A stretch of DNA of 13,995 nucleotides from Fonticula alba ATCC 38817 (taxonomy: Eukaryota > Protista > Nucleariida): NCBI GenBank assembly GCA_000388065.2, contig KB932203.1. The stretch is one strand, 5' to 3'. Both the position numbers and the translations under genes were made by a program. Shown piece by piece: positions 1 through 13,103 of this stretch. How positions within the stretch are numbered: the first letter of the stretch is position 1; every line of letters starts with the position of its first letter. The notes beneath the pieces are model-generated. The model was not told where the DNA came from. It did no database searches and saw nothing but the letters and a program-made list of their open reading frames with translations.

Positions 1-622
1 CCCCCCAGGGCCCGGCGACACGTGTGTCCCCCGCCCAGGATAGCGGAAACCCGCGGGGGCCTCCGCACACAGAGCAGGGCGCCGGGCCCCCCGGCCCCCC
101 GACCGATGGGGGAAAGATGTGTCCGCCGACACCGTGAGAGAGCCTCGAGGGGGCATGTGCGCGCGCGCGCACAGCCGGGCACGCCCCCACCTTCGGCAGC
201 CGGGCGGGGGGGCGGGGGGGGGGGGGGGCCGGCCTGACGCGGACGCCCCGCCTGGCGACAAGATAATCCTAAATGGTGCTCCCTGTTCACATGATGTGAG
301 TATCGGAGCACTCGGGCGCGTGATGCTCTTTCATTTTACGCATCGCCCCGATCGGAGGGCCCGCGCGCCGGCCAGTGATGAGGCGCGCCGGCGGGAGAGG
401 CGGCATCGGACGCGTGTGCACTGGGCGCGCCCCCAGTCGGGGTGGGCCGAGCCGGGCCGGGCCAGGCCGGGCCGGGGGGCCGCATCCCCTCCTGGGGAGA
501 AAAGTGGTCCCCTCCTGTAGCGGCGCGCGATCTCCACTCATCCAACCCCAGCCCCTTTTTGCATACTGCCGCCACGTCCCCCGCCCGCGCGCCCCAGATC
601 CCGCCCAGATCCGGATTCCCCC

Positions 623-707
623 NNNNNNNNNNNNNNNNNNNNNNNNNNNNNNNNNNNNNNNNNNNNNNNNNNNNNNNNNNNNNNNNNNNNNNNNNNNNNN
701 NNNNNNN
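623..707. other. Assembly gap (85 N), probably hiding the first exon of the carrier gene
   Basis: Run of N flanked by C homopolymers, ~90 nt upstream of the acceptor at 796. Confidence 0.9.
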
Positions 708-796
708 CCCCCCCCCCCCGGTCCCCGGCCCTCCTTTGTTGCTGCTTTCGCGCCACCTCGCCGGCCTCTGACCCCCGCCCTCCCGCGCCTCGCCAG

Positions 797-2696
797 TCCT
801 CCATCCCCTGGACACGGTGAAGATCCGCCTGCAGGCGGTCCAGCCCTCGCCCCCGCTCTACACCTCGCTCGGCCAGACGTGGGCCCGCATCGCCGCCGAG
901 GAGGGCTTCTGGCCGGGGCTCTTGCGGCCGGGGCTCGTGGCCAACCTCTATCGCGAGGCCATCTACTCGTCATTGCGCATGGGGCTGTACCCGTATGTCC
1001 GCGGGGCCCTATGCGGCGAGGATGCCGGTGCGTCGTGATACCACCACCATTGTGGTCATGGGCAGGGGAGGATGAGGGCCGGGCCGGGTGGGGAGCCTCT
1101 GCCCTGTGGCCCGGCCTTGCTGCCACCCCTCAGCCAGCGGCCCCGGCGATGCTCACACTAACATGGCCGTGCCCCTCCTCGCCGCGGTGACCGCCAACAC
1201 CCGGGCCTAGACCCTGGCCTGGCCAAGCGCCTGCTGGCCGGGCTGCTGACCGGGGCCATCGGCTCGGCCCTGGCCAATCCCCTGGATCTGGTGAAGATCC
1301 GCATGCAAGCCGAGGCTGGTGTCATTCGCGACGGGCGCTATGTGGTACGCGCGTGCAAGGGCACATTCGCACAGGCGCCGAAAATGGGGAAGGCCGCCTC
1401 CGGCCATGGAGATCTGACCACCTATATCCCCGGCCTCCCGGCAGACCGGCCTCCGTACCGGCAGCGCCCCGACTGCCACCTCGACAATGGGGTTCCTCCG
1501 GCATGCCATGTATGCCCCCCAGCCGGCGGCGCCGGCCCTCGCCCCGCCGACCGTCAGCGTCGACGCCCTGCGGCGTGTCAATGCGGCGGTCTCGCCGCCG
1601 GGGGGGCTGATCAGCGCCTCGGCCGAGGCTGCTGCTGGCGCCACCACCGGGCCGCTGGTCTTTCGTCCGTCCGGGCTCTTCCGGGGCGTCGGCCCGACGG
1701 CCGCCCGTGCGGCCCTCCTCACTGCCGGCCAGATGGGCACCTACGACCACTCGAAGACCGTGCTCAAGCGCAATGGCCTCATGAATGAGGGTCTGGCTCT
1801 GCACTCGGTGTGCGTGACCGCCTCGGCCCCTGGCCCTTTGGCTGTCTCTTGCTCTGCCCGCCTGCCTGCCCAGCTGCCTGCGCTCCCCTCTGATGTGCCT
1901 GCCTCCTTACGCCCGACCTGCTCGCCCCCCGCCCCCTCTGATGTGCCCCTCTCTGTCGCGCTCTCTCCCTCTCCCTTGCTCCCTCTCCGCCGTGCGTGCC
2001 GCCCTCCAGTGCAAGTCTCATTGCTGGCCTCACAGCCACCACCATCAGCATGCCGGCCGATGTGATCAAGACGCGGCTGATGGCCGCCCGTCGATCGGCC
2101 GATGCCGCCGCCGCCCCTGGTCCCCCTGGCGGGGCTCCGCTGTCCACGGCCGGTGTGCCCGCCGTTCGGTCGCTGCTGTCTCCGACCACCACGCTCGGAT
2201 GCGTGGTCGATGTACGTTCCACTCTGGGAGTGTGCATGCCCCTTTTCCTTCCTCCTCCCCCCCCACACACACATGCACATGCACATGCACATGCGCATGG
2301 ACGCTCGCGCGCACACACTGAGCCAGGCACAGCCAGAGAGGTGGGCCACGAGAAACACCCCCAGACACATGAATCTAACTCCGGCCGACATCCAGATCAT
2401 CAAGCGGGAGGGCATGCTTGCCCTGTGGCGCGGCTGGTGGCCGGCATATCTGCGCATCGGCGCCCACTTTATCATTGTACGTGTCGCGCCCACGGGAGCG
2501 GGTTTCGCCACCCAAGAGGGCCCCACACGGCGAAACCGTCGCCCTGCCTCTCCCTCTCTGTCCCCTCGGCGGGACGATCCCGTCCCCCAGTACTGACGCT
2601 CGTTGGCCCCTCCGCCCCCCCCGGCCACCACCGGACACACAGTGCCTGCCACTGAACGAGCAGATCCGCAGTGCGATGGGACTCAGTGCTATCTGA
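797..2696 (+). CDS. Mitochondrial carrier (SLC25/MCF), UCP/dicarboxylate/2-oxoglutarate carrier-like; 5'-partial. Exons 797-1027, 1211-1344, 1445-1809, 2010-2211, 2396-2476, 2643-2696
   Basis: Three PX[DE]XX[KR]XR signatures: PLDTVKIRLQ, PLDLVKIRMQ, PADVIKTRLM. Even-helix motifs REAIYSSLRMGLY, GVGPTAARAALLTAGQMGTYDH and EGMLALWRGWWPAYLRIGAHFII; ends LPLNEQIRSAMGLSAI*. All five introns are GT(A/G)CG...AG and keep frame. As recalled, the pattern resembles Dictyostelium UcpB-type carriers. The N-terminal ~25-30 aa are not visible. Confidence 0.95.
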
Positions 2697-3617: not shown

Positions 3618-5240
3618 ATGACCGAATCGCCGACCACTGAGCAGCAGGCACCGCCGGTCCCTTCGGTCACGGTCCTGCCGGGAAAGGTCTCTCATTTGGG
3701 GGTCGACCAAGAGGATGCTGCCTCGATCGTCTCAGACGAGCAGCTCGTCGCCGAGAACGCCCCGAGCGCCCAGGCAACACCGCCGCTCGGGTCGGACCAG
3801 CTGTCCTCTCGGCCTGACGACCGATCTTCAGATGCCCAGGCCACGGCCGACCAGCCTCCAAGCACCGAAGCCGCGGACGCGCCGCCGGCCCTGCCACACG
3901 CCCCGGCCATGATCACCATCACGCCGGACGCTCGCACGGACCAGGTGCTGGAGTCCACCGATTCCGGCACCCTAACGACCGAGCTGGAGGAGGAACCTCC
4001 GCTTGGCACCGACACCTCACGGGAGGCCGATGCGCCTGGGGCTGACGGACCGGAGGGCCTGGCCCAGGCCACCGGGGGCCTGGCTGAGGGCCGCGCCACC
4101 TCCGAGGCTTCCGCCAGCGAGGGCTGCAGCACCGCCCCCTCGCCCAGCACCGAACCCCATGCTCCGGCCCCCGAAGCCGGAATGCCGGGCGCTGACCCGG
4201 TCGACCCCGGCGAGACGTCCATCCTGCGCATCCCCTTTCAGGCGACGCTGCGCCGGCTGCTGCGCACCTGGGCCGAGCAGGGCGGCTCCGGCCGCGGGGA
4301 GTGCGCCGCATGTCAGCCGAGCCGCACATCGAGCCGGGATTCCCTCTCGGAGGTGGTGTTGGATTTCGACACGAGCCCCGGGGGCGACGACGCCCCGGCC
4401 ACCGACGCGCCAGCCGGGGCCCGGGGCACCGCCTCCCCGCGCGTCAGCAACGCCTCGCTGCCGGTGGTGGAGATGGACCAGGATGGCGACGTGGTCCGGA
4501 GCCACGCGCTCCAGTGCCCGCAAGGGTGGCTGCTCCTGCTGCCGGAGGCTCCCTCCAATGGCCCGGGATCCGAGGCTGACGATGAGCCCCTCTCCCCGGC
4601 GCCGACCGCGGAGGAGCTGGCCCAATCGCAGCTGCTCGGCTTCCTGTCCGAAGCTGTCAGCCTGGACCCGGACCTGGAGGAGAACCAGCACGCGGCCGGT
4701 ACGTGCTCGCCCGCACATGCGCCCCCGGTCAGCCGGTCCTCCGGGCTTGAGCTCTCCCAGGACTGCCCCGCCCCCGCCCCCCCCGGGGGCGTGTGTGGGC
4801 ACCGGGCCGGGGCCAAGAAAATTGACCATGGTGCCGGCTCATGTGTCCCTGCGCGCCCGGTCCCCGACCCTGGGCCTGCTGCCCTGCTAACCGCTTTGAC
4901 TGCCTGCCTCGCCGCCTACACACCCTACCTTCCGCCGCCGACCCCCTCGTTCGCCCTCCCCTCTCCCCCCCGATCTACACCCCCCCCCCCCCCCCCCCCT
5001 CCTTCGCACCTGCTGACCATGTCACCCGCCCACCTGCTGGCCCTGCTGCCCGCGCCTGACAGAGCTTTGCGGGCTGACCGTGCGCGCGGCCACCGAGGTC
5101 GCCGCGGCCGGGGCCCCGGTGTCCTCCAAGCGTGATGTCCTCCTCCTGACCTATCTGCTGCTTCGAGTGCGCTTTCGATTTGATACCGTGCGGACGACAG
5201 CCACCCGCCGCTCTTTCACCGCTTGGCTGACCTCGCTCGC

Positions 5241-5339
<99 letters not shown>

Positions 5340-5349
5340 NNNNNNNNNN

Positions 5350-5447
<98 letters not shown>

Positions 5448-8400
5448 GGCCATCCTTTTCTTCCCTACCCCTCCGCGCCGTGCCCCGGCGGTCAGCTCGA
5501 TGGAGATACTGCCGCGGCCGGGCGCATCTTCCGGCATCTGCGTCGATCGCAGCGCAAGCTGGATGCCGGGCTGATTCGCGGTCGGTCGGCCGGCCAGCGG
5601 GCCGTGCACATCCCGCCCTTCGTCGAACGCCGGCTCTGTCCGGATGCCGCAGACTCGGCCACGCGCACCCGTGTGGCCAATGCCCTGGATGACTGGTACA
5701 TTTGCATGCAGTGGTTCATCGCCGGCACCTGGGCTTGCTTCGGGGTACGTGGAGAGCCCCTGCCGGCCGCCCTTTCCTGCTGGCCCTCGTCAAGACCCAG
5801 GAGGGGGGGGGGGGGGTGTCTGCCATTCTCTTGCCTGACACACGCACATATATGTTTATCCATGCCACGGCCACTGTCCTCGCGGCCGTCGCCCTCGCGG
5901 CCCTTCCTGTCCATCGACCACCTCCCTGGTGCCCGGCCGCCCGGCAACCCGACCACCCAACCAACCAACCATTCGTTGCGCAGCTCGCCGCCAACTGGAC
6001 CGGGGTGTTGGTACATGCGGCCCTGACCGAGCAGCTGCCCGGGCTGCTGGACGCCCTGGCCCGGCAGGCGGCCACCAATGCCGTGGTTGCCGCGCCGGCC
6101 GAGGGGGATCTGGACACCCTGGAAGAGCCGGACTCCTTCGATGTGGCGATCCGACTGCGCGCGGCTCGGGCGCTGGCCCGCATCGGCGACCCCCTGCTGG
6201 CCAATGTCAATTTGGCCGTCTGGACCGGGGAGATTTATGACGAGTGGCCGGTCGAACGCCGGACCTTGTGCGAGCAGCAGGACCGGGCCCCGGGCCAGGA
6301 CGACGCCCCCCCGGGGGATGACCTGTTTTTCGTGGAGCACCGCGACACCGGCGAGACTCTGTCCGCCATGTTTGGCGCGGTGTCGACCACGGCCGCGGCA
6401 TCGCTCCTGCTGGCCGGCCTGACCAGCCCGGCCCCGGGGGCTGGCGATGCCCGGCACCCGGCCGGCCCGCTGGTCCAGCTGGAAGACCACCAGCGTGGCT
6501 TGTCCTCGGTGAGCATCTCCTTGCGCGCGTTGCTCGGCGACCCGGACGCCCTGCTGGCCTTGGTGGACTTCGCCAATAGCCAGGCGGACAATGATGTGCG
6601 CGAAGCTCGTGACACGGCCACCGGCCGCCGGGCACGTCTTCGCCAGCGCCTCCGCCGACTGGCCGGCCACAAGACGGCCACCGGCGGCAAGCCCGACCCC
6701 CCGACCACCTCGGCACATGGCCATGCCCACTCGGACGACATGCGCCACCAGGCGGGCTCCCCGGATGACGCAGACCGGCAGTCGGCCGATGGGCCCCGGC
6801 TGGAGGAGCTGGTCGAGGGGGCGGACGAGCGAGACATGGAGGAGGCGGAAGCTGAGGCCCACGCCCTGGCTGCTGGGGCCGGACGCTCGACTCGCACCCA
6901 GCGTGCCCTCAATGCGGCGTACCTCTTTTGGCGGTGCCTGGAGTTCGAGCGGGCAGCCCTCATGCTCGGCGAGGGCACGGTCGAACAGGGCCGCGATGTC
7001 CTGGAGGCCATGGCCCGGGAGATTATCGACGCGTACTTGGTGCCAGGCGGCCCGGAGTATGTGGGACCCCTGCCGGAGACCTGCCTGCAGCATGTGTCCG
7101 AGCGTCTGTTCCAGGGGACCGACATTCGCCGGGACCTCTTCCGCCCGGTACGCGAGTACCTCCTGCCCGCGTCGGCGGCCGAGGCGGCCGAGGCCCGGCC
7201 CGGGGGCCGTGCCGCTGCTGGCTGGCAGGACGACGCGTCGGACCCCGGCCCGGGGCCCGACCTGCGCAAGCTCCTGCGCGCCTTCCTGGCCGACGGGTCC
7301 CGGGCCAACTCGGTCCTGCAAACGGACCAAGCTCGCCGGCGGGAGATCGCCCTGGCCACGGCCAGCCTGGCGGCCAAGCGCAAGGCCGCACGGCGCCGGG
7401 CCCGCGCCCAGGACGCCCTCCTGGCGGCCGGTCGCGCGCTGGCCGGCCAGGCTCCCTCCCTGCGCCGAGGACTCCAAATGCCTGCGGAAAGGACCGCGGC
7501 ACAGGTGCTTGCCGCCGTCCGTCGGACCGGTCGGGCCTTGCCGCGGATGGGGCGCCGCGCTCGACGCGCCCGCGCCATGGACTTCCTGCCGGCGCCGGCG
7601 TCGACGGGCCACGCCGGCGATTCGGCCGGTGCCCCGCCCCTGACCGAGGACCACCCCGCGGACGACCCGCTCATCTGGCAATGTGACGCGCTGATCTTCG
7701 ACCGGGGCAAGTGGATGGTGCGTCGCCATTAGGCCCTCCGCCTGGCCGGGGGCCTTTTTTTCGCCTCCGGTAGCCACGGACGCGCTCCCCGGTCCCCAGC
7801 GTGTCGGCCGGTGATTTTTGGAGCTCTCTCCCTCTGCCTTGCCCGCCTTGTGACCATGGCCACCGCACTAACACGCGCCCTCGCGAACCCCGGGGCTCCA
7901 ATCCGGGCCGCAACCACCCCACGCCACAGCCCAGTGACACCCCCCCGCCGTCGGTGGACGAGGCGATGGACGTCTGTGCTCGGACCACCGTGGCCAGCTT
8001 CCGCCTCGGCCCCGGCGGGGACCCGGATGCCCCGGGCGCGGCACTGACCCTGGACCCGGAGACCCTGGTCACCGGGCTGCCAGAGGTGATCCTCCTGCAG
8101 CGCGTCAGCGATCCCGCCCGGGCGGCCATCCTCTCGTGCATCACCATCCAACGAATGTACTGCGTCACGCCACCGGCCCCGCGCGACAGCATGGCCTTCG
8201 CCGCCGGGCTGATGATCCTCTCGCGCATCCGGCCCTCGCTGGTGGTGGTCCTGCCAGATGCCCCGGTCATGATGATGCTCTGCGGGCTGAACGCTCGCCG
8301 CACCACGCTGGCCACCTTCGACGCGCATCCGGGCGTCCTCCAAGGCCTGGCCAGCGTCCAGCGCCAGCCGGGCTGGCGCGCCACCGACTGCATTTATGCC

Positions 8401-9625
8401 GGCCCGGTGGCCGGGGCCAGCATGGTCGAGCAGGCCTCCGCCATGGGCTTCTTGTGCGTATCCGCCCGGGCCCTTGGGCCGACAACGGCCACCATGGCAG
8501 AAGAGCCCGCGACCGGTGTCCTCACTAGGCCGTTACTGACTGTCGCTTTCACGCGTGCACACGCCCGTACATGTATTTTCCTTTGGTGCCTTTTTGGGTT
8601 TGCCTTTCCACGCGCGCGCGCCACAGTGACGCCTGGTCGCGGCACTGCACCGGGCAGTCGAGCGAGCGCTCGCGCACCGCCGTGGCTCCGGACTGCTGCC
8701 GCGGCCTGGGGCACCCGGCCGCCCGCACCGTGGTGGCCCACCGCGTCATGGCACTCTTCGACGGGGAAACCGCCGACCCGGACGACTACCCCCTGCCCGA
8801 GGTGGCGCCTGGCAGTCCGGCGCTCGGAGTGCCCAGTCCTCCGGAGGGCAGCCCGGCCCCCCGAGGGCCGGCGGCTGACTTGAAGATTGCCACGCCAGTC
8901 TTGCAGGACCCCGGCAGCGAGGGAGCCGCCAGTCCCGCTGTGTCGCCCTCCAGTCCCGCTGTGTCGCCCTCCAGTCCCGCTGTGTCGCCCTCCAGCCCGG
9001 ATGGCTCGGCCGCCAGCCCATTGGCGGCCCCGGCAACCAGATCTCCACCAGGCGAGGTGGCCACGCAGTCCATGGGGGCGAGCGCCTCCACGAACGGAAC
9101 AGCAACCCCCCCAGCCGGGACGGGGGGCGCCCCCCCAGACGGTCAACAACCGGGCTGCCAGTGCCGCAGCATTTCGGCGGAGCTGCTTCAAGAGGATCTC
9201 CGCACGCGGCCAGACCGCATGCTCATCCAGACGGTGCGACAAAAGCCGGCCGCGTCACCGCACCCCTCGGGCCATACTAACACACACACACACACGGGTG
9301 CATGCCGAACGCTCAGAGAGGTGACTTTTGGAGCGTGGCTTCCGCCTGTACAATGGGCCTGACGTACACCCAGGGCACGCCAATTGGCTCGCCAGAACGG
9401 CCGCTGCGCCAGTTGCCCGGCGTGTCCGGGCAGGGACCCCCGCGACCAGGCCCCGCGGCCCAGCGGGCGCTTCGCCTGGCTGCCCGCCGCCGCGGGCTCA
9501 AGGTCACGCTGGAGGCCCCACCCAGCGCGGTGGCCGCCGCGCGCGCTGCTCACGCCGCGCGCTCATCGCCTAATCACCAACTGGCACTCAGTGGAGAGGC
9601 CTCCTTCGGTTGCCAGGTCATGTAA
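3618..9625 (+). CDS. Large multidomain protein (~1542 aa): acidic disordered N-terminus, 2-3 RGS-homology domains, degenerate HAD (MDP-1-like) domain(s). Exons 3618-4698, 5063-5187, 5496-5744, 5984-7717, 7930-8453, 8627-9233, 9317-9625
   Basis: Exon lengths sum to 4629 nt (1543 codons) with no internal stop. Donors gtacgt/gtgcgg/gtacgt/gtgcgt/gtgcgt/gtgcga with CAG acceptors in matching phase; branch sites CACTAAC 7866, TACTGAC 8534, TACTAAC 9275. RGS-like motifs SLRALLGDPDALLALVDF, YLFWRCLEF, AREIIDAYLVPGGPEYVG, DLFRPVREYL. HAD-like motifs DALIFD, AAILSC, DCIYAG...ASAMGF. Confidence 0.8.
5245..5446 (+). repeat. (CTG)n trinucleotide microsatellite, about 64 units visible, interrupted by a 10-N gap; intronic
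   Basis: Perfect TGC repeats at 5245-5339 and 5350-5446, inside predicted intron 5188-5495. Confidence 0.97.
6515..7294 (+). other. RGS-homology domain (best-conserved copy) within exon 4 of the large gene
   Basis: ISLRALLGDPDALLALVDF (a1-a3), NAAYLFWRCLEFE (a4), AMAREIIDAYLVPGGPEYVGPLPETCLQHVSERL (a5-a6), DLFRPVREYL (a7) and LRKLLRAFLAD (a8-like) follow the PF00615 helix pattern, with insertions. Confidence 0.8.
7682..8650 (+). other. HAD-superfamily (MDP-1/class IIIC-like) domain, degenerate, spanning exons 4-6
   Basis: CDALIFDRGKW (motif I), LVTGLPEVILL...AAILSC (helix plus motif II), FDAHPGVLQGLASVQRQPGWRATDCIYAGPVAGASMVEQASAMGF (motif III/IV region and terminal helix-Gly). Confidence 0.6.
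8931..8998 (+). repeat. Coding 21-bp tandem repeat, 3 copies plus a partial (SPAVSPS)
   Basis: AGTCCCGCTGTGTCGCCCTCC x3, followed by AGCCC. Confidence 0.95.
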
Positions 9626-9914: not shown

Positions 9915-9980
9915 GCAACCCCGGTGAAGACATGACTGTATTCTTCCTCAAGGACAGGCGGGGGGGGGGAGGCTAGGACA

Positions 9981-10528
9981 TTACAAGGAGCCGTCTAGCA
10001 GCGGGACTTTCGGGCTGGACGAGGAGAGGGACGACTGCACGGACGAGACAGATCCAGCCGGCGAGGCGGGCTCTGTAGTGGCTGCACTGGCCCCGGCAGC
10101 TGCGGCGGCCGCACCGGCCATGCTCACTGACGCCCGGAAGGCCTCATACTCGTCGGCGGCCTTCTCGTCCTCCTCGAATTGCGACTCATACCGTTGCAAC
10201 ACAGGATCCATGGTGGCCAGCTTGCGGGAGATATGACCTCCTTGCAGCCCGGGGGCCCCCTCGGCCGGGGGAGGGTGTCCATCGGGTCCAGGCCCTGCGG
10301 ACGTTGGCAGCCCGGCTTCCGGGAAGACCGGATGCACGGCCGTCGACGAGGTGGCGCCCCCGGCCAGTGCCGGGCCGGTGTCAATGTACATGCCACTGCG
10401 CTCAATGCGCTCGATGATGAGAACCAGCTGGCCGATGCGGGTGACAGAAATCTGCGCATGGACATGGGCGCGCCAGGGATCGATGGGAGGATGGGCGGGG
10501 GAGGAGCCAGCCAGACAGACAGACAGAA

Positions 10529-10619
<91 letters not shown>

Positions 10620-11635
10620 TGGACACAAGGGGGGAGAGTTAGCATGGGCGACAGGCCGCCTTGGAAAGCGCGTATGCGGAAACAGCACAGAAGACACACC
10701 CAGAGGAGAAGAATCGCCGGCACCAGGCACAAGAGGCCGGCATTGTGTAGCGACAGGCCAGCTGCGATGGGAGGTCAGGAAGGGCATCGGCCAAGCGAGG
10801 GGCTGTCGGTCGAGGGCAGACTATTTGAGGGTCGGGCAGGATTCGCACCAAGCAATGAGGCGATGATCATGGCCGTATCGCCGATCAGGAAAATGACATA
10901 CTGCGCGCGGTCGCGACACAGGAGCCAGAGGAGACGAGAAAATAGAGAGATGGTGAGAGGGAAAGAGAGGGGGAGGGGTGGAGAGGGGGAGGGGTGGAGA
11001 GACGCAAAAAGAGCAGAGAGAGAGAGGGGGGGGGGGAGGGAACACAGGGTATCAGAACGCTGGAGCGCGAGAAGCACGAGAAGACCCTGGAGTCGAACCC
11101 GGACACGGAGCCGGGTGGCAAGGAGAGGACGTACCACCAGTCGAAAGACCTTGTGAATGGTCAGGCGCTTCTGCAGGGCGACCACCTGCTCCTCGGCCGT
11201 CTGGGCACAGCAAGTACATAGGTGTACAGGCGCACACACGCACACACGCACACACGCACACATACATACATACACACATACATACATACACACATACATA
11301 CATACATACATACAGGATAAGGGAGGAGAGAGAGAGAAAGACAAAAAAGAGTAGGGTCAGTCACATAGGGACTACCTTGGCAAGCAGAGAGGAAAGCGCA
11401 AGCGCACCATGCAGCCCGGAGGGGGATAGAAGGAGAAAATCGACTCGGACGTCGGGCCGTAGGGCGGATGCCGGGCATCGGTGTTGAAGAAGTCATCACT
11501 CAGCAGCGGCATGCTGGCCTGGGCCACATCCGGATCCGAGGGAAAGTCATCAGGCCCGCCACGAGGAAAGAACACCGGGAGCTGGTCCCTCGGCTCTGGG
11601 TCGAAGGTGCCGAAGCTGGCGAAAGGATGCGCCAT
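9981..11635 (-). CDS. Hypothetical membrane protein, ~292 aa, two predicted TM helices. Exons (minus) 11635-11408, 11200-11135, 10900-10849, 10761-10700, 10451-9981
   Basis: Exons total 879 nt (293 codons); donors gtgcgc/gtacgt/gtgcga/gtgtgt, CAG acceptors, phases consistent. Spliced core TAEEQVVALQKRLTIHKVFRLVYVIFLIGDTAMIIASLLAGLSLHNAGLLCLVPAILLLWISVTRIGQLVLIIERIERS contains two hydrophobic segments. No family recognised. Confidence 0.75.
10512..10619 (+). repeat. (CAGA)n tetranucleotide microsatellite, ~27 units, in intron 4 of the minus-strand gene
   Basis: Near-perfect CAGA repeats with one variant unit; reads (TCTG)n on the sense strand. Confidence 0.97.
11232..11314 (+). repeat. Compound (CA)n/(CATA)n microsatellite in intron 1 of the minus-strand gene
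   Basis: gcacacac units grading into (CATA)n. Confidence 0.9.
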
Positions 11636-12737
11636 TGTGTCGGTCTCCTGACGGCGGGCGGGCGGGCGCGCAGGTCGGCGAAGGGGCGGGGAAGAAAAGG
11701 AAAGTCACGTCCGCCTGAAGGGCGGGTGTCGGCGAGTGCTTGCGCAGGGGGACGAGGCGGAGGGAGGGGGGGAGCGGCAGCGGCGCACGGGCGGATGGAG
11801 ATGATGAGTGTGGAGGCGGGCGGAGGGGAGGGGAGGAGGGAAGTGCAGAAGCCCTGGGGGGTGTGGGGTCGTCGGGCTGCTCCCTGAAAGCCTCAGCCGG
11901 GGGGGGGGGGGGTCCCGGTCGCCAGAGGCGCTGTCGACAGGCAGGCCGAGAGGGGCGCGAGGGTGAGACAGTGAAGTACACTGCACACAGGGAGGCCAGA
12001 AGCGGGCACAGGCCGCCGGAAAGAGGGACTCGGGAGGGAGGGGGTCGGGAAATCATTCGTTGGCGAGATCAGCCGTGGGAGGGCACGCAGGGGGGGGGGG
12101 GGGGGGACCCCGGGGAGGCCCCCCCCCCCCCCCCTTTTTCTCCCCCGGGCCCCCCCCCCCCCGGGAGCCCCCCGCGGGGGAGACGGCCACACATAGGGGA
12201 CTTCACGGGGGGACCCCCAAAACAAAGGCCCCACCAGCCCCCAGCCAACCGCCCTGGCCGCCTGGGACCCTGGAGGCGGGGTGCGGACACCCGCCAGCGG
12301 GCACCCCCCCCCCCCCCCCCCCCCAAGGGACCGGGCATGGCAACCCAGCCAACCATGGGTCAGGCCTTCGGGACCGGACGGGGCTGCCAGACCGCGAGGA
12401 GGGTGAAGAAAAAAAACAAGAACAACTATGAACCTTAAAAAGCCACAACAAGAAATACTGAATATTCGCGCGGCCAGAGCCGTCCCGCCGGGCCTAGGGA
12501 GGCGGCACATGGGTTACACCGGCCCCCGCACACACCTCTGCGCCGGTCTACGACGCCAAGCGAGGCCGGGACATGGGGATCCCGGACCCGCACCCACCCA
12601 CCCACCCACACCCGCACGCATATATACACGCACACTCGCACGCAGGCACACAGATACACACGCCTGGAGGTGTCGGCGCATCGCGTAGTCCCCATGTTGT
12701 CTCCGCTTTGGGGGACTGGAGCGGGACGACAGTTGGT

Positions 12738-13103
12738 NNNNNNNNNNNNNNNNNNNNNNNNNNNNNNNNNNNNNNNNNNNNNNNNNNNNNNNNNNNNNNN
12801 NNNNNNNNNNNNNNNNNNNNNNNNNNNNNNNNNNNNNNNNNNNNNNNNNNNNNNNNNNNNNNNNNNNNNNNNNNNNNNNNNNNNNNNNNNNNNNNNNNNN
12901 NNNNNNNNNNNNNNNNNNNNNNNNNNNNNNNNNNNNNNNNNNNNNNNNNNNNNNNNNNNNNNNNNNNNNNNNNNNNNNNNNNNNNNNNNNNNNNNNNNNN
13001 NNNNNNNNNNNNNNNNNNNNNNNNNNNNNNNNNNNNNNNNNNNNNNNNNNNNNNNNNNNNNNNNNNNNNNNNNNNNNNNNNNNNNNNNNNNNNNNNNNNN
13101 NNN
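12738..13103. other. Assembly gap (366 N)
   Basis: Run of N. Confidence 0.99.

What the first reader, a model, noticed from the sequence alone, without database searches (positions are those of the whole stretch)
3618..9625. Hidden fusion gene: multi-RGS-homology protein spliced to a HAD-like domain
The ORF track suggests an RGS ORF ending at TAG 7732 and an unrelated ORF from 7801. However, a consensus donor (ATG|gtgcgt, 7718), a CACTAAC branch site (7866) and a phase-0 acceptor (cacag|, 7929) join them in frame. The junction makes biochemical sense: HAD motif I (DALIFD) lies just before the intron and the rest of the HAD-like fold lies after it. The product is a ~1542 aa protein with RGS-homology domains plus a HAD-like module. 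I know RGS fusions to kinases, PX/PXA, DEP/GGL, RhoGEF and 7TM domains, but I do not recall an RGS-HAD fusion. It could be a lineage-specific scaffold linking G-alpha signalling to phosphate or phosphoprotein sensing (inference).
Basis: partly seen in the sequence, partly recalled or inferred. Interest (0 to 1): 0.8.

Follow-up and report, generated by a model that had tools for sequence, protein, structure and literature searches.

The report
Annotated orphan gene, not RGS-HAD fusion
The two reading frames are very probably joined by an intron, but that joined gene is already in GenBank as a Fonticula alba hypothetical protein, and tests against real RGS and HAD/MDP-1 families do not show that it is an RGS-HAD fusion.

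Summary
Window 3618-9625 (+) is Fonticula alba gene H696_02214 (XP_009494390.1, 1482 aa, "hypothetical protein"). The public model already has the 7717/7930 junction, so the fusion is not hidden.

- **Splice signals:** they are real. GTGCGT sits at 7718, CACTAAC at 7866 and CAG at 7929. The window holds only 3 YACTAAC against 0.36 expected.
- **Junction:** no RNA contig covers it.
- **Assembly gap:** 5340-5349 lies in a (CTG)~69 array inside annotated intron 2, so it touches no modelled codon.
- **RNA contigs:** they confirm intron 9234-9316. They contradict two annotated 3' features, which gives a 1535-aa product.
- **Homologues:** phmmer over 1.84 billion proteins found only the protein itself for residues 479-1056.
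- **Family models:** Pfam and NCBIfam give no RGS or HAD.
- **HAD test:** against 54 real MDP-1 proteins, hhalign gives probability 0.2% (P 0.27). DxDxT is not intact.
- **RGS test:** against 15 verified RGS sequences, one 23-residue stretch (816-838) matches weakly (P 0.008). A GRK6 RH-domain hit has E about 1. The other two proposed RGS segments score nothing.
- **Structure:** AlphaFold models were unusable (pLDDT 34-40).
- **Language-model features:** they point to RGS and HAD, but below the tool's own threshold.

Verdict: a real, already annotated orphan gene; the domain reading is unproven. An earlier scan note (s1-066387) made the same MDP-1 claim on this window.

The parts
3618..4698 (+). 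Exon 1 (ATG 3618; residues 1-360, low-complexity Ala/Pro/Asp/Thr-rich)
   Evidence: The chain of annotated exons reproduces P0001 exactly. ATG 3618 is the first ATG after an in-frame stop. No RNA evidence.
4699..5062 (+). Intron 1 (GTACGT...CAG, phase 1)
   Evidence: Model only.
5063..5166 (+). Exon 2
   Evidence: Model only.
5167..5495 (+). Intron 2 (GTGCGC...CAG, phase 0). It holds the (CTG)~69 array 5241-5446 and the assembly gap 5340-5349
   Evidence: The gap is intronic in the model, and the repeat phase is kept as written. No RNA evidence.
5496..5744 (+). Exon 3
5745..5983 (+). Intron 3 (GTACGT...CAG, phase 0)
5984..7717 (+). Exon 4 (residues 479-1056); transcribed
   Evidence: 100% match to P0001 residues 479-1056. 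RNA contigs lie on 6696-6848 and 7028-7213. GC3 is 0.8-0.93.
6890..7174 (+). Possible RGS/RH-like helical segment (residues 781-875: ...LFWRCLEFER...AREIIDAYLVPGGPEYV...DLFRPVREYL)
   Evidence: hhalign P 0.008 over residues 816-838. GRK6 RH domain residues 96-157 at E about 1. Shuffle p 0.012-0.02. Atlas features: 77 of 100 hits are RGS clusters, at score 0.79. Pfam finds nothing.
7718..7929 (+). Intron 4, the junction in question (GTGCGT donor 7718; CACTAAC 7866-7872; CAG acceptor 7927-7929; phase 0). It contains the TAG 7730-7732 that ends the upstream ORF
   Evidence: GC3 is flat here. The intron is in the public model. No RNA coverage.
7930..8453 (+). Exon 5 (residues 1057-1231), the proposed HAD-like module; the most hydrophobic part of the protein
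   Evidence: GC3 is 0.85-0.90. Hydrophobic fraction is 0.33-0.42. No HAD family by Pfam, NCBIfam, PDB or hhalign. Atlas features point to HAD families at 0.66-0.78.
8454..8626 (+). Intron 5 (GTGCGT...CAG, phase 2)
8627..9233 (+). Exon 6 as RNA shows it. It includes 9068-9169, which the public model removes as an intron. It holds a 21-nt x3.4 repeat at 8929-8999 (SPAVSPS)
   Evidence: RNA contigs run unbroken over 8969-9177 and 8984-9190. Tandem repeat. Model lengths.
9234..9316 (+). Last intron (GTGCGA...TACTAAC 9275...CAG, 83 nt), confirmed by RNA
   Evidence: A joint from 9232 to 9316 (cut +1, GT..AG) appears in contigs of X1 and X2. The public model uses acceptor 9373 instead.
9317..9625 (+). 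Last exon, stop TAA 9623-9625

Best explanation
This is the already annotated Fonticula alba gene H696_02214. It is a + strand gene with seven exons once adjusted to the RNA evidence, and eight in the public model.

**Gene structure**
- Its fourth intron (7718-7929) removes the TAG at 7732.
- That splice joins the long 5984-7717 exon in phase 0 to the 7930-8453 exon.
- The product is about 1482-1535 aa.

**The protein**
- It is rich in Ala, Pro, Arg and Gly.
- Most of it is low-complexity and probably disordered.
- No detectable homologue was found in public protein collections.
- Four more hydrophobic islands could fold: residues about 361-480, 541-600, 781-875 and 1081-1232.

**Domain reading**
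- The protein is not a demonstrable member of the RGS family or of the HAD/MDP-1 family.
- At most, residues about 781-875 keep a faint RGS/RH-like helical signature.
- In the only alignment register suggested, that segment lacks the G-alpha contact residues.

**Inferred function.** If the islands fold, the protein most likely acts as a non-catalytic, lineage-specific scaffold or regulatory protein. It is unlikely to be a GTPase-activating protein or a phosphatase.

**Shown versus inferred**
- Shown: identity with the public model, the splice signals, the coding signal, partial transcription, the last intron, and the absence of family matches.
- Inferred: use of the 7717/7930 junction in vivo, the fold of the islands, and the function.
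For: - **Identity with the public model.** phmmer over 1.84 billion representatives returns one protein, P0001 (1482 aa, 100% identity over 479-1056). It is KCV71267.1 / XP_009494390.1, H696_02214 of Fonticula alba. The gene call spans exactly window 3618-9625. Its exon chain reproduces the protein, junction 7717/7930 included.
- **Splice signals.**
- **Coding signal.** GC3 switches frame across a flat 7740-7920 stretch.
- **Transcription and last intron.** RNA contigs lie on exon 4 and exons 6-7. Intron 9234-9316 is confirmed.
- **Orphan status.**
- **No family match.** Pfam, NCBIfam and PDB sequences find nothing.
- **MDP-1 tests negative.** hhalign P 0.27 and 0.26. HMM score -2.7 bits, with 270 of 2000 shuffles scoring at least as high.
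- **RGS hint in one segment only.** The controls were real RGS sequences scoring 52-124 bits.
- **Composition.**
Against: - **Junction not transcript-supported.** No transcript covers 7717/7930 or introns 1-3 and 5. The junction rests on signals and on a gene model that may be ab initio.
- **Language-model features disagree in direction.** They point consistently to RGS (77 of 100 hits) and to HAD families. The HAD score rises from 0.66-0.68 to 0.77-0.78 when the 21 residues upstream of the junction are added.
- **Limited sensitivity.** A very diverged single sequence without homologues can escape every profile method.
- **Fold untested.** Both AlphaFold runs were unusable.
Confidence: 0.68

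Rival explanations
1. [not shown]
For: - Atlas language-model features: 77 of 100 hits for residues 479-1056 are RGS clusters.
- All listed named hits for residues 1036-1236 are HAD-type or labelled HAD-like: MDP-1/Acid_PPase, FCP1 homology, HAD_2.
- The GRK6 RH domain is one of only three PDB hits, and it aligns in the expected register.
- hhalign P 0.008 on RGS helices 4-5.
- The hydrophobic islands coincide with the proposed domains.
Against: - All Atlas scores are below 0.8. The tool states that a third of shuffled proteins reach a first hit of 0.8 or more, and a third also get ten consistent family hits.
- Pfam and NCBIfam find nothing, even at E<=10.
- MDP-1 profile tests are at chance level.
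- The invariant MDP-1 residues D10, D12, T14 and the FFDD pair are not matched: the sequence reads F-D-R-G-K-W, then CIYAGP or GFFDAW.
- The two other proposed RGS segments score nothing.
- No fold evidence.
Confidence: 0.15
2. Two genes, or an intron-retaining main transcript. The upstream protein would end at TAG 7732 (about 1061 aa). The downstream exons would be translated separately from ATG 7966.
For: - The first in-frame ATG of the downstream frame is at 7966, only 36 nt after the proposed acceptor.
- No RNA contig crosses 7358-8788.
- The public model is wrong at two other places near the 3' end, so it is not fully RNA-based.
Against: - A strict GTGCGT donor lies 12 nt before the stop.
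- One of only three YACTAAC boxes in the window lies inside the interval.
- The join is phase-compatible and the intron length (212 nt) is typical.
- Only 233 nt would be left for a 3' UTR, a promoter and a 5' UTR.
- RNA depth is similarly low on both sides.
Confidence: 0.12
3. The 5' part of the model (exons 1-3) is wrong. Either the (CTG)n array is coding, as poly-Leu in the frame of exon 3, or exons 1-2 belong to another transcript.
For: - Frame 2 is open from about 5190 through the array to 5744 (ORF 5223-6026).
- The donor of intron 2 is GTGCGC, not the strict hexamer.
- There is no RNA evidence upstream of 6696.
Against: - A run of 65 or more leucines is implausible.
- The annotated chain is phase-consistent, with GT..AG ends.
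- GC3 of exon 1 is 0.8-0.9 in its frame.
Confidence: 0.05

Closest known systems
Fonticula alba H696_02214 hypothetical protein (KCV71267.1 / XP_009494390.1 / UniProt A0A058ZCV3; GCA_000388065.2, KB932203.1)
   Same: It is the same locus. The gene call covers window 3618-9625, and six of its seven introns have the donors and acceptors used here, including 7717/7930.
   Different: RNA contigs read through annotated intron 9068-9169 and use acceptor 9316 rather than 9373. The transcript-supported product is therefore 1535 aa, not 1482 aa. The public record gives no domain or function.
RGS domain (Pfam PF00615) and the RH domain of GPCR kinases (GRK6, PDB 3nyn)
   Same: Residues 816-838 (DVLEAMAREIIDAYLVPGGPEYV) align with RGS helices 4-5 (hhalign P 0.008). 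GRK6 RH residues 96-157 align with residues 816-875 in the same register at E about 1. An 'LFW' lies where RGS has 'EFW'.
   Different: - There is no Pfam match at E<=10.
- hhalign probability is only 4.9%.
- In the suggested register, the SEEN motif reads NAA and the Asn after 'EV' reads Gly (low confidence).
- Real RGS controls score 52-124 bits.
Magnesium-dependent phosphatase 1 family (MDP-1, Pfam PF12689 Acid_PPase; HAD superfamily, capless type)
   Same: The size is similar (about 190 aa). A hydrophobic strand followed by Asp (ALIFD) lies at the start, and 'GFFDA' resembles the family's FFDD. Atlas features list MDP-1 clusters at 0.77.
   Different: - hhalign probability is 0.2%, P 0.26-0.27.
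- The HMM score is -2.7 bits, equal to shuffles.
- The second Asp and the Thr of DxDxT are absent, and the FFDD pair is not kept.
- E. coli GmhB shows nothing either.
Other RGS fusion genes noted in this genome by the scan (for example RGS-FSP1/AIFM2-like reductase: s1-065421, s1-065403, s1-065514)
   Same: They come from the same organism and show the same theme of an RGS joined to an enzyme-like module.
   Different: According to those notes, which I did not check, those genes carry recognisable RGS domains and belong to a widespread family. This protein has no recognisable RGS and no homologues.

Membership tests
RGS domain (PF00615) | Match to the family profile at or above the gathering score (23.9 bits) | tested here: not met
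   No RGS hit at E<=1 in the exon translations. None at E<=10 in P0001 or its segments. Control RGS sequences scored 52-124 bits.
RGS domain (PF00615) | Similarity over the whole ~120-residue domain in profile comparison | tested here: inconclusive
   - hhalign against 15 RGS sequences (A2): probability 4.9%, P 0.008, only 23 columns.
- hmmsearch gives 0.8-1.2 bits. Shuffles reach that in 60 of 3000 for residues 760-890 and 36 of 3000 for residues 778-880.
- GRK6 RH domain at E 0.9-1.1.
RGS domain (PF00615) | G-alpha contact residues (SEEN motif; Asn after 'EV' in the helix 5-6 loop) | tested here: inconclusive
   In the permissive alignment these positions read NAA and Gly. Alignment confidence there is near zero.
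RGS domain (PF00615) | Nine-helix bundle fold | tested here: inconclusive
   AlphaFold2 on a single sequence gave mean pLDDT 40, and 52-60 in this segment. It predicts helices, but no usable fold. No fold search was run on it.
   Residues 330-480 score P 0.71 and residues 640-760 score P 0.54 against A2. Neither is above shuffles. PDB gives no RGS hit.
HAD superfamily / MDP-1 (PF12689) | Match to a HAD family profile | tested here: not met
   Pfam and NCBIfam give no HAD family. An MDP-1 HMM built from 54 proteins scores -2.7 bits, and 270 of 2000 shuffles score at least as high. PDB sequences give no HAD.
HAD superfamily / MDP-1 (PF12689) | Profile-profile similarity to the family | tested here: not met
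   hhalign against A1: probability 0.2%, P 0.27 for residues 1036-1236, and P 0.26 for 1040-1290. GmhB alignment: P 0.48.
HAD superfamily / MDP-1 (PF12689) | Motif I DxDx[T/V] (nucleophile Asp and the acid/base Asp two residues on) | tested here: not met
   The sequence reads A-L-I-F-D-R-G-K-W (residues 1047-1055). Only the first Asp is present. In A1, D10 is invariant and D12 and T14 are at least 90% conserved.
HAD superfamily / MDP-1 (PF12689) | Motif IV acidic pair (FFDD, invariant in A1) | tested here: not met
   The candidates are CIYAGP (no acid) or GFFDAW across the exon 5/6 junction (one Asp).
HAD superfamily / MDP-1 (PF12689) | Rossmannoid alpha/beta core fold | tested here: inconclusive
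   AlphaFold2 on a single sequence gave pLDDT 34 for residues 1057-1232 and about 30-45 within the larger model.
Public gene model H696_02214 | Same exons and same product | tested here: met
   The exon chain in window coordinates translates exactly to P0001. Accessions. Locus.

The most novel reading that the evidence does not exclude
The protein really does combine a very diverged, non-GAP RGS/RH-like bundle (residues about 781-875) with a degenerate, catalytically dead capless HAD (MDP-1-like) module. That module would be split over exons 4-6. This domain pairing has not been described, and it would be confined to the Fonticula lineage.
Probability: 0.12. Interest if true: 0.5.

Novelty: already known. 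Interest (0 to 1): 0.15.

Why it matters
- **Little changes.** The spliced gene is already in GenBank, and there is no tested support for a new RGS-HAD architecture.
- **Correction to the public model.** RNA contigs keep annotated intron 9068-9169 and use acceptor 9316 rather than 9373. The supported product is 1535 aa.
- **Assembly gap.** It sits in an intronic CTG microsatellite and affects no modelled codon.
- **A caution for the scan.** Motif resemblances read by eye in a 70% GC, Ala/Pro/Arg-rich orphan protein, together with sub-threshold language-model hits, did not survive comparison with real family alignments.
- **If the domain reading were later proven.** It would be a lineage-specific curiosity, a pseudo-enzyme scaffold near G-protein signalling. 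It would not answer an open question.

Tried and rejected
1. **RNA test of the junction.** The only runs that hold this locus (X1 and X2, 12 Mb each) have no contig over 7358-8788. Two large runs under a 'same species label' laid no reads at all. No more reads could be laid, so the junction remains untested.
2. **Homologue searches to build an alignment.**
   - phmmer over 1.84 billion representatives found only the protein itself.
   - Two word-index searches for residues 1030-1240 also found only the protein itself.
   - With no alignment, both AlphaFold2 jobs ran on a single sequence and were unusable (pLDDT 34 and 40).
   - I ran no fold search, because matches to such models are meaningless.
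3. **Family libraries.** Pfam, NCBIfam and PDB sequence searches on the whole protein and on segments gave nothing relevant. The exception is GRK6 at E about 1.
4. **Antisense ORFs** (for example 5492-7777, 761 aa) have no family match. They are rejected as the usual by-product of high GC.
5. **E. coli GmhB as a capless HAD comparator.** BLASTP and hhalign found nothing. The 80 loci fetched were all 88-99% identical, so the profile was shallow.
6. **A viral-contig scan for an RGS motif** returned no RGS. The metagenome scan did.
I used hhalign's own P-values instead.
8. **Rfam:** no RNA family in the window.
9. **Literature:** no paper mentions the accession. A GPCR survey that includes Fonticula says nothing about this gene.
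10. I also could not submit an RNA-adjusted spliced protein to the tools, because it has no reference.
Full report
**What the locus is**

The window is about 70% G+C. I searched the translation of 5984-7717 with phmmer against 1.84 billion representative proteins. It returned one protein, P0001 (1482 aa), 100% identical over its residues 479-1056.

P0001 is KCV71267.1 / XP_009494390.1 / UniProt A0A058ZCV3, 'hypothetical protein H696_02214' of Fonticula alba. Its gene call on KB932203.1 spans exactly window 3618-9625, with no Pfam family on record.

I rebuilt the annotated exon chain in window coordinates:
- 3618-4698
- 5063-5166
- 5496-5744
- 5984-7717
- 7930-8453
- 8627-9067
- 9170-9233
- 9374-9625

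This chain translates exactly to P0001. The protein reads ...CDALIFDRGKWM|PSDTPPPSVDEAM....

**The assembly gap (tested first, as asked)**

- Ns 5340-5349 lie inside one (CTG)68.7 array, 5241-5446.
- That array lies inside annotated intron 2, 5167-5495.
- The nearest modelled codons are 173 nt upstream and 146 nt downstream of the gap.
- As written, the ten Ns keep the CTG phase. The true array length is unknown.
- Under the model the gap touches no codon.
- There is no RNA evidence for introns 1-3, so the 5' part of the model is unverified.
- A reading in which the array encodes poly-Leu in the frame of exon 3 cannot be excluded from sequence alone. I rate it unlikely.

**The junction**

- TAG at 7730-7732.
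- ATG|GTGCGT at 7717/7718.
- CACTAAC at 7866-7872.
- CAG| at 7929, phase 0.

The signals are more than chance would give:
- GTRCGT occurs 20 times in the window against 8.3 +/- 2.8 expected from shuffles.
- Its four + strand copies inside the gene are exactly the four modelled donors 4699, 5745, 7718 and 8454.
- YACTAAC occurs three times against 0.36 expected, all on the + strand. One copy lies in the intron that RNA confirms.
- Third-position G+C is 0.8-0.93 in the frame of exon 4. It is flat at about 0.69 in all frames over 7740-7920. It is 0.85-0.90 in the frame of exon 5.

What is missing is transcript evidence.
- The only runs that hold this locus are two small 2012 RNA data sets from one sample.
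- Their contigs lie on 6696-6848 and 7028-7213 (exon 4) and on 8929-9434. Nothing lies between 7358 and 8788.
- The downstream frame has its first ATG at 7966. A two-gene or intron-retention reading therefore remains possible; I give it about 0.12.

**What RNA does show**

- Contigs of both runs skip 9234-9316 (GT..AG, 83 nt, TACTAAC at 9275). This confirms that intron and the + strand orientation.
- The public model uses acceptor 9373 instead.
- Contigs also run unbroken over 8969-9177 and 8984-9190. That reads straight through annotated intron 9068-9169, whose donor GTCCAT is poor.
- With these two corrections the product is 1535 aa with no internal stop.

**Is it an RGS protein?**

Standard searches give nothing significant:
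- Pfam finds no RGS in the exon translations at E<=1.
- Pfam also finds none in P0001 or eight segments at E<=10.
- NCBIfam and PDB sequence searches find nothing significant.

To make a direct test I fetched real RGS genes.
- I scanned metagenome contigs for a degenerate EENLEFW motif.
- Six ORFs verified as PF00615 at 52-124 bits.
- I aligned 15 sequences (A2).

Results against A2:
- Residues 760-890 give hhalign probability 4.9%, P 0.008, over 23 columns. Residues 816-838 align on RGS helices 4-5.
- An HMM built from A2 scores this segment 0.8-1.2 bits. Shuffles equal or exceed that in 1.2-2% of cases.
- None of the other eight segments stands out.

Two further hints point the same way:
- Against PDB sequences, residues 778-880 give only three hits at E<=10. 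One is the RH domain of GRK6, residues 96-157, in the same register at E about 1.
- The ESM Atlas feature search gives 77 of 100 nearest clusters as RGS, at score 0.79. The tool says a third of shuffled proteins also reach a first hit of 0.8 or more.

In the permissive alignment the G-alpha contact positions read NAA for SEEN and Gly for the Asn. Alignment confidence there is negligible.

My reading is that one RGS/RH-like helical segment is possible, at roughly 0.4. 'Multi-RGS' is not supported, and membership is not shown.

**Is there a HAD/MDP-1 module?**

- Pfam, NCBIfam and PDB sequence searches give no HAD family.
- I fetched real MDP-1 genes by scanning viral contigs for FDLDxTLWP.
- I expanded these to 94 PF12689 proteins and aligned 54 (A1).
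- hhalign of residues 1036-1236, which span the junction, against A1 gives probability 0.2%, P 0.27.
- Extending the query into exon 6 (1040-1290) gives P 0.26.
- An HMM built from A1 scores -2.7 bits, and 270 of 2000 shuffles score at least as high.
- E. coli GmhB, another capless HAD, gives nothing.

The motifs are not matched. In A1, D10 and the F134/F135/D136/D137 run are invariant, and D12 and T14 are at least 90% conserved. The candidate motif I here is F-D-R-G-K-W. Motif IV would be CIYAGP or, across the exon 5/6 junction, GFFDAW.

Some evidence leans the other way:
- Atlas features list only HAD-type families among named clusters.
- Their score rises from 0.66-0.68 for exon 5 alone to 0.77-0.78 when the 21 upstream residues are included. 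This is still under the tool's lead threshold, and the two searches were not run with the same settings.

I put a HAD-like fold at about 0.3. MDP-1 membership is not supported.

**Structure**

With no homologues, both AlphaFold2 jobs ran on single sequences and failed:
- pLDDT 34 for residues 1057-1232.
- Mean pLDDT 40 for residues 330-1240.

I ran no fold search on them.

**Nature of the protein**

- Composition is 16% Ala, 9.5% Pro, 8.6% Arg and 8% Gly.
- Most 60-residue windows are 70-90% disorder-promoting residues.
- The more hydrophobic islands are 361-480, 541-600, 781-840 and 1081-1200.
- No homologue was found for residues 479-1056 in 1.84 billion representatives.
- No homologue was found for residues 1030-1240 in two length classes.
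- Antisense ORFs have no family match, and no Rfam family occurs in the window.
- No paper names the gene.

**Verdict**

The two ORFs are most likely one spliced gene.
- That gene is already annotated.
Structure could not be tested.
- The best explanation is a lineage-specific, largely disordered, probably non-catalytic protein of unknown role, with at most a faint RGS-like remnant.
- Interest is low.
- The residual novel case, a true RGS-like plus pseudo-HAD architecture, has a probability of about 0.12.

Noticed in passing
window 9068-9169 and 9234-9373: The public model H696_02214 has two errors at the 3' end. RNA contigs read through annotated intron 9068-9169 (102 nt, in frame, weak GTCCAT donor). 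They also use acceptor 9316 rather than 9373. Together these add 53 residues (1535 against 1482 aa).
   Followed up: yes
window 5241-5446: A pure (CTG)n microsatellite of at least 69 units is interrupted by the 10-N gap, inside a predicted intron. Its true length is unknown. The frame of exon 3 is open through it, which would read as poly-Leu.
   Followed up: partly
window 8929-8999: A 21-nt tandem repeat of 3.4 copies encodes SPAVSPS repeats in exon 6. It is transcribed (RNA contigs cover it).
   Followed up: no
window 623-707 and 12738-13103: Two further assembly gaps. The second explains the apparent G+C dip to 0.31 at 12501-13000 in the composition profile. The first lies inside the span of the upstream mitochondrial-carrier gene.
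   Followed up: no
window 273-2696 (+), 9981-11635 (-), from 13850 (-): Neighbouring gene calls in the public assembly are a Mito_carr protein (347 aa), a 292-aa protein with no Pfam family, and a ResIII/DEAD/Helicase_C protein. RNA contigs cover 9961-10200 at a higher depth than the gene studied.
   Followed up: no
L083-L090 (IMG/VR contigs, e.g. L088:9485-10036:+): Seven of eight 'viral' contigs matching FDLDxTLWP encode complete MDP-1/Acid_PPase phosphatases. Two are from one giant-virus MAG (GVMAG-M-3300027712-35). They are either giant-virus MDP-1 genes or eukaryotic contigs binned as viral.
   Followed up: no
L116:163-4788:-: A G+C-rich metagenome contig carries a 1542-aa uninterrupted ORF with a verified RGS domain (70.7 bits) in an Ala-rich context. 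It is a bona fide RGS in a protein of similar size and composition, but it shows no detectable similarity to H696_02214 beyond that.
   Followed up: no
window 4975-5000 and 5803-5816: Long homopolymer runs lie inside introns 1 and 3: C about 24 and G about 14. Such runs are typical trouble spots for assembly.
   Followed up: no
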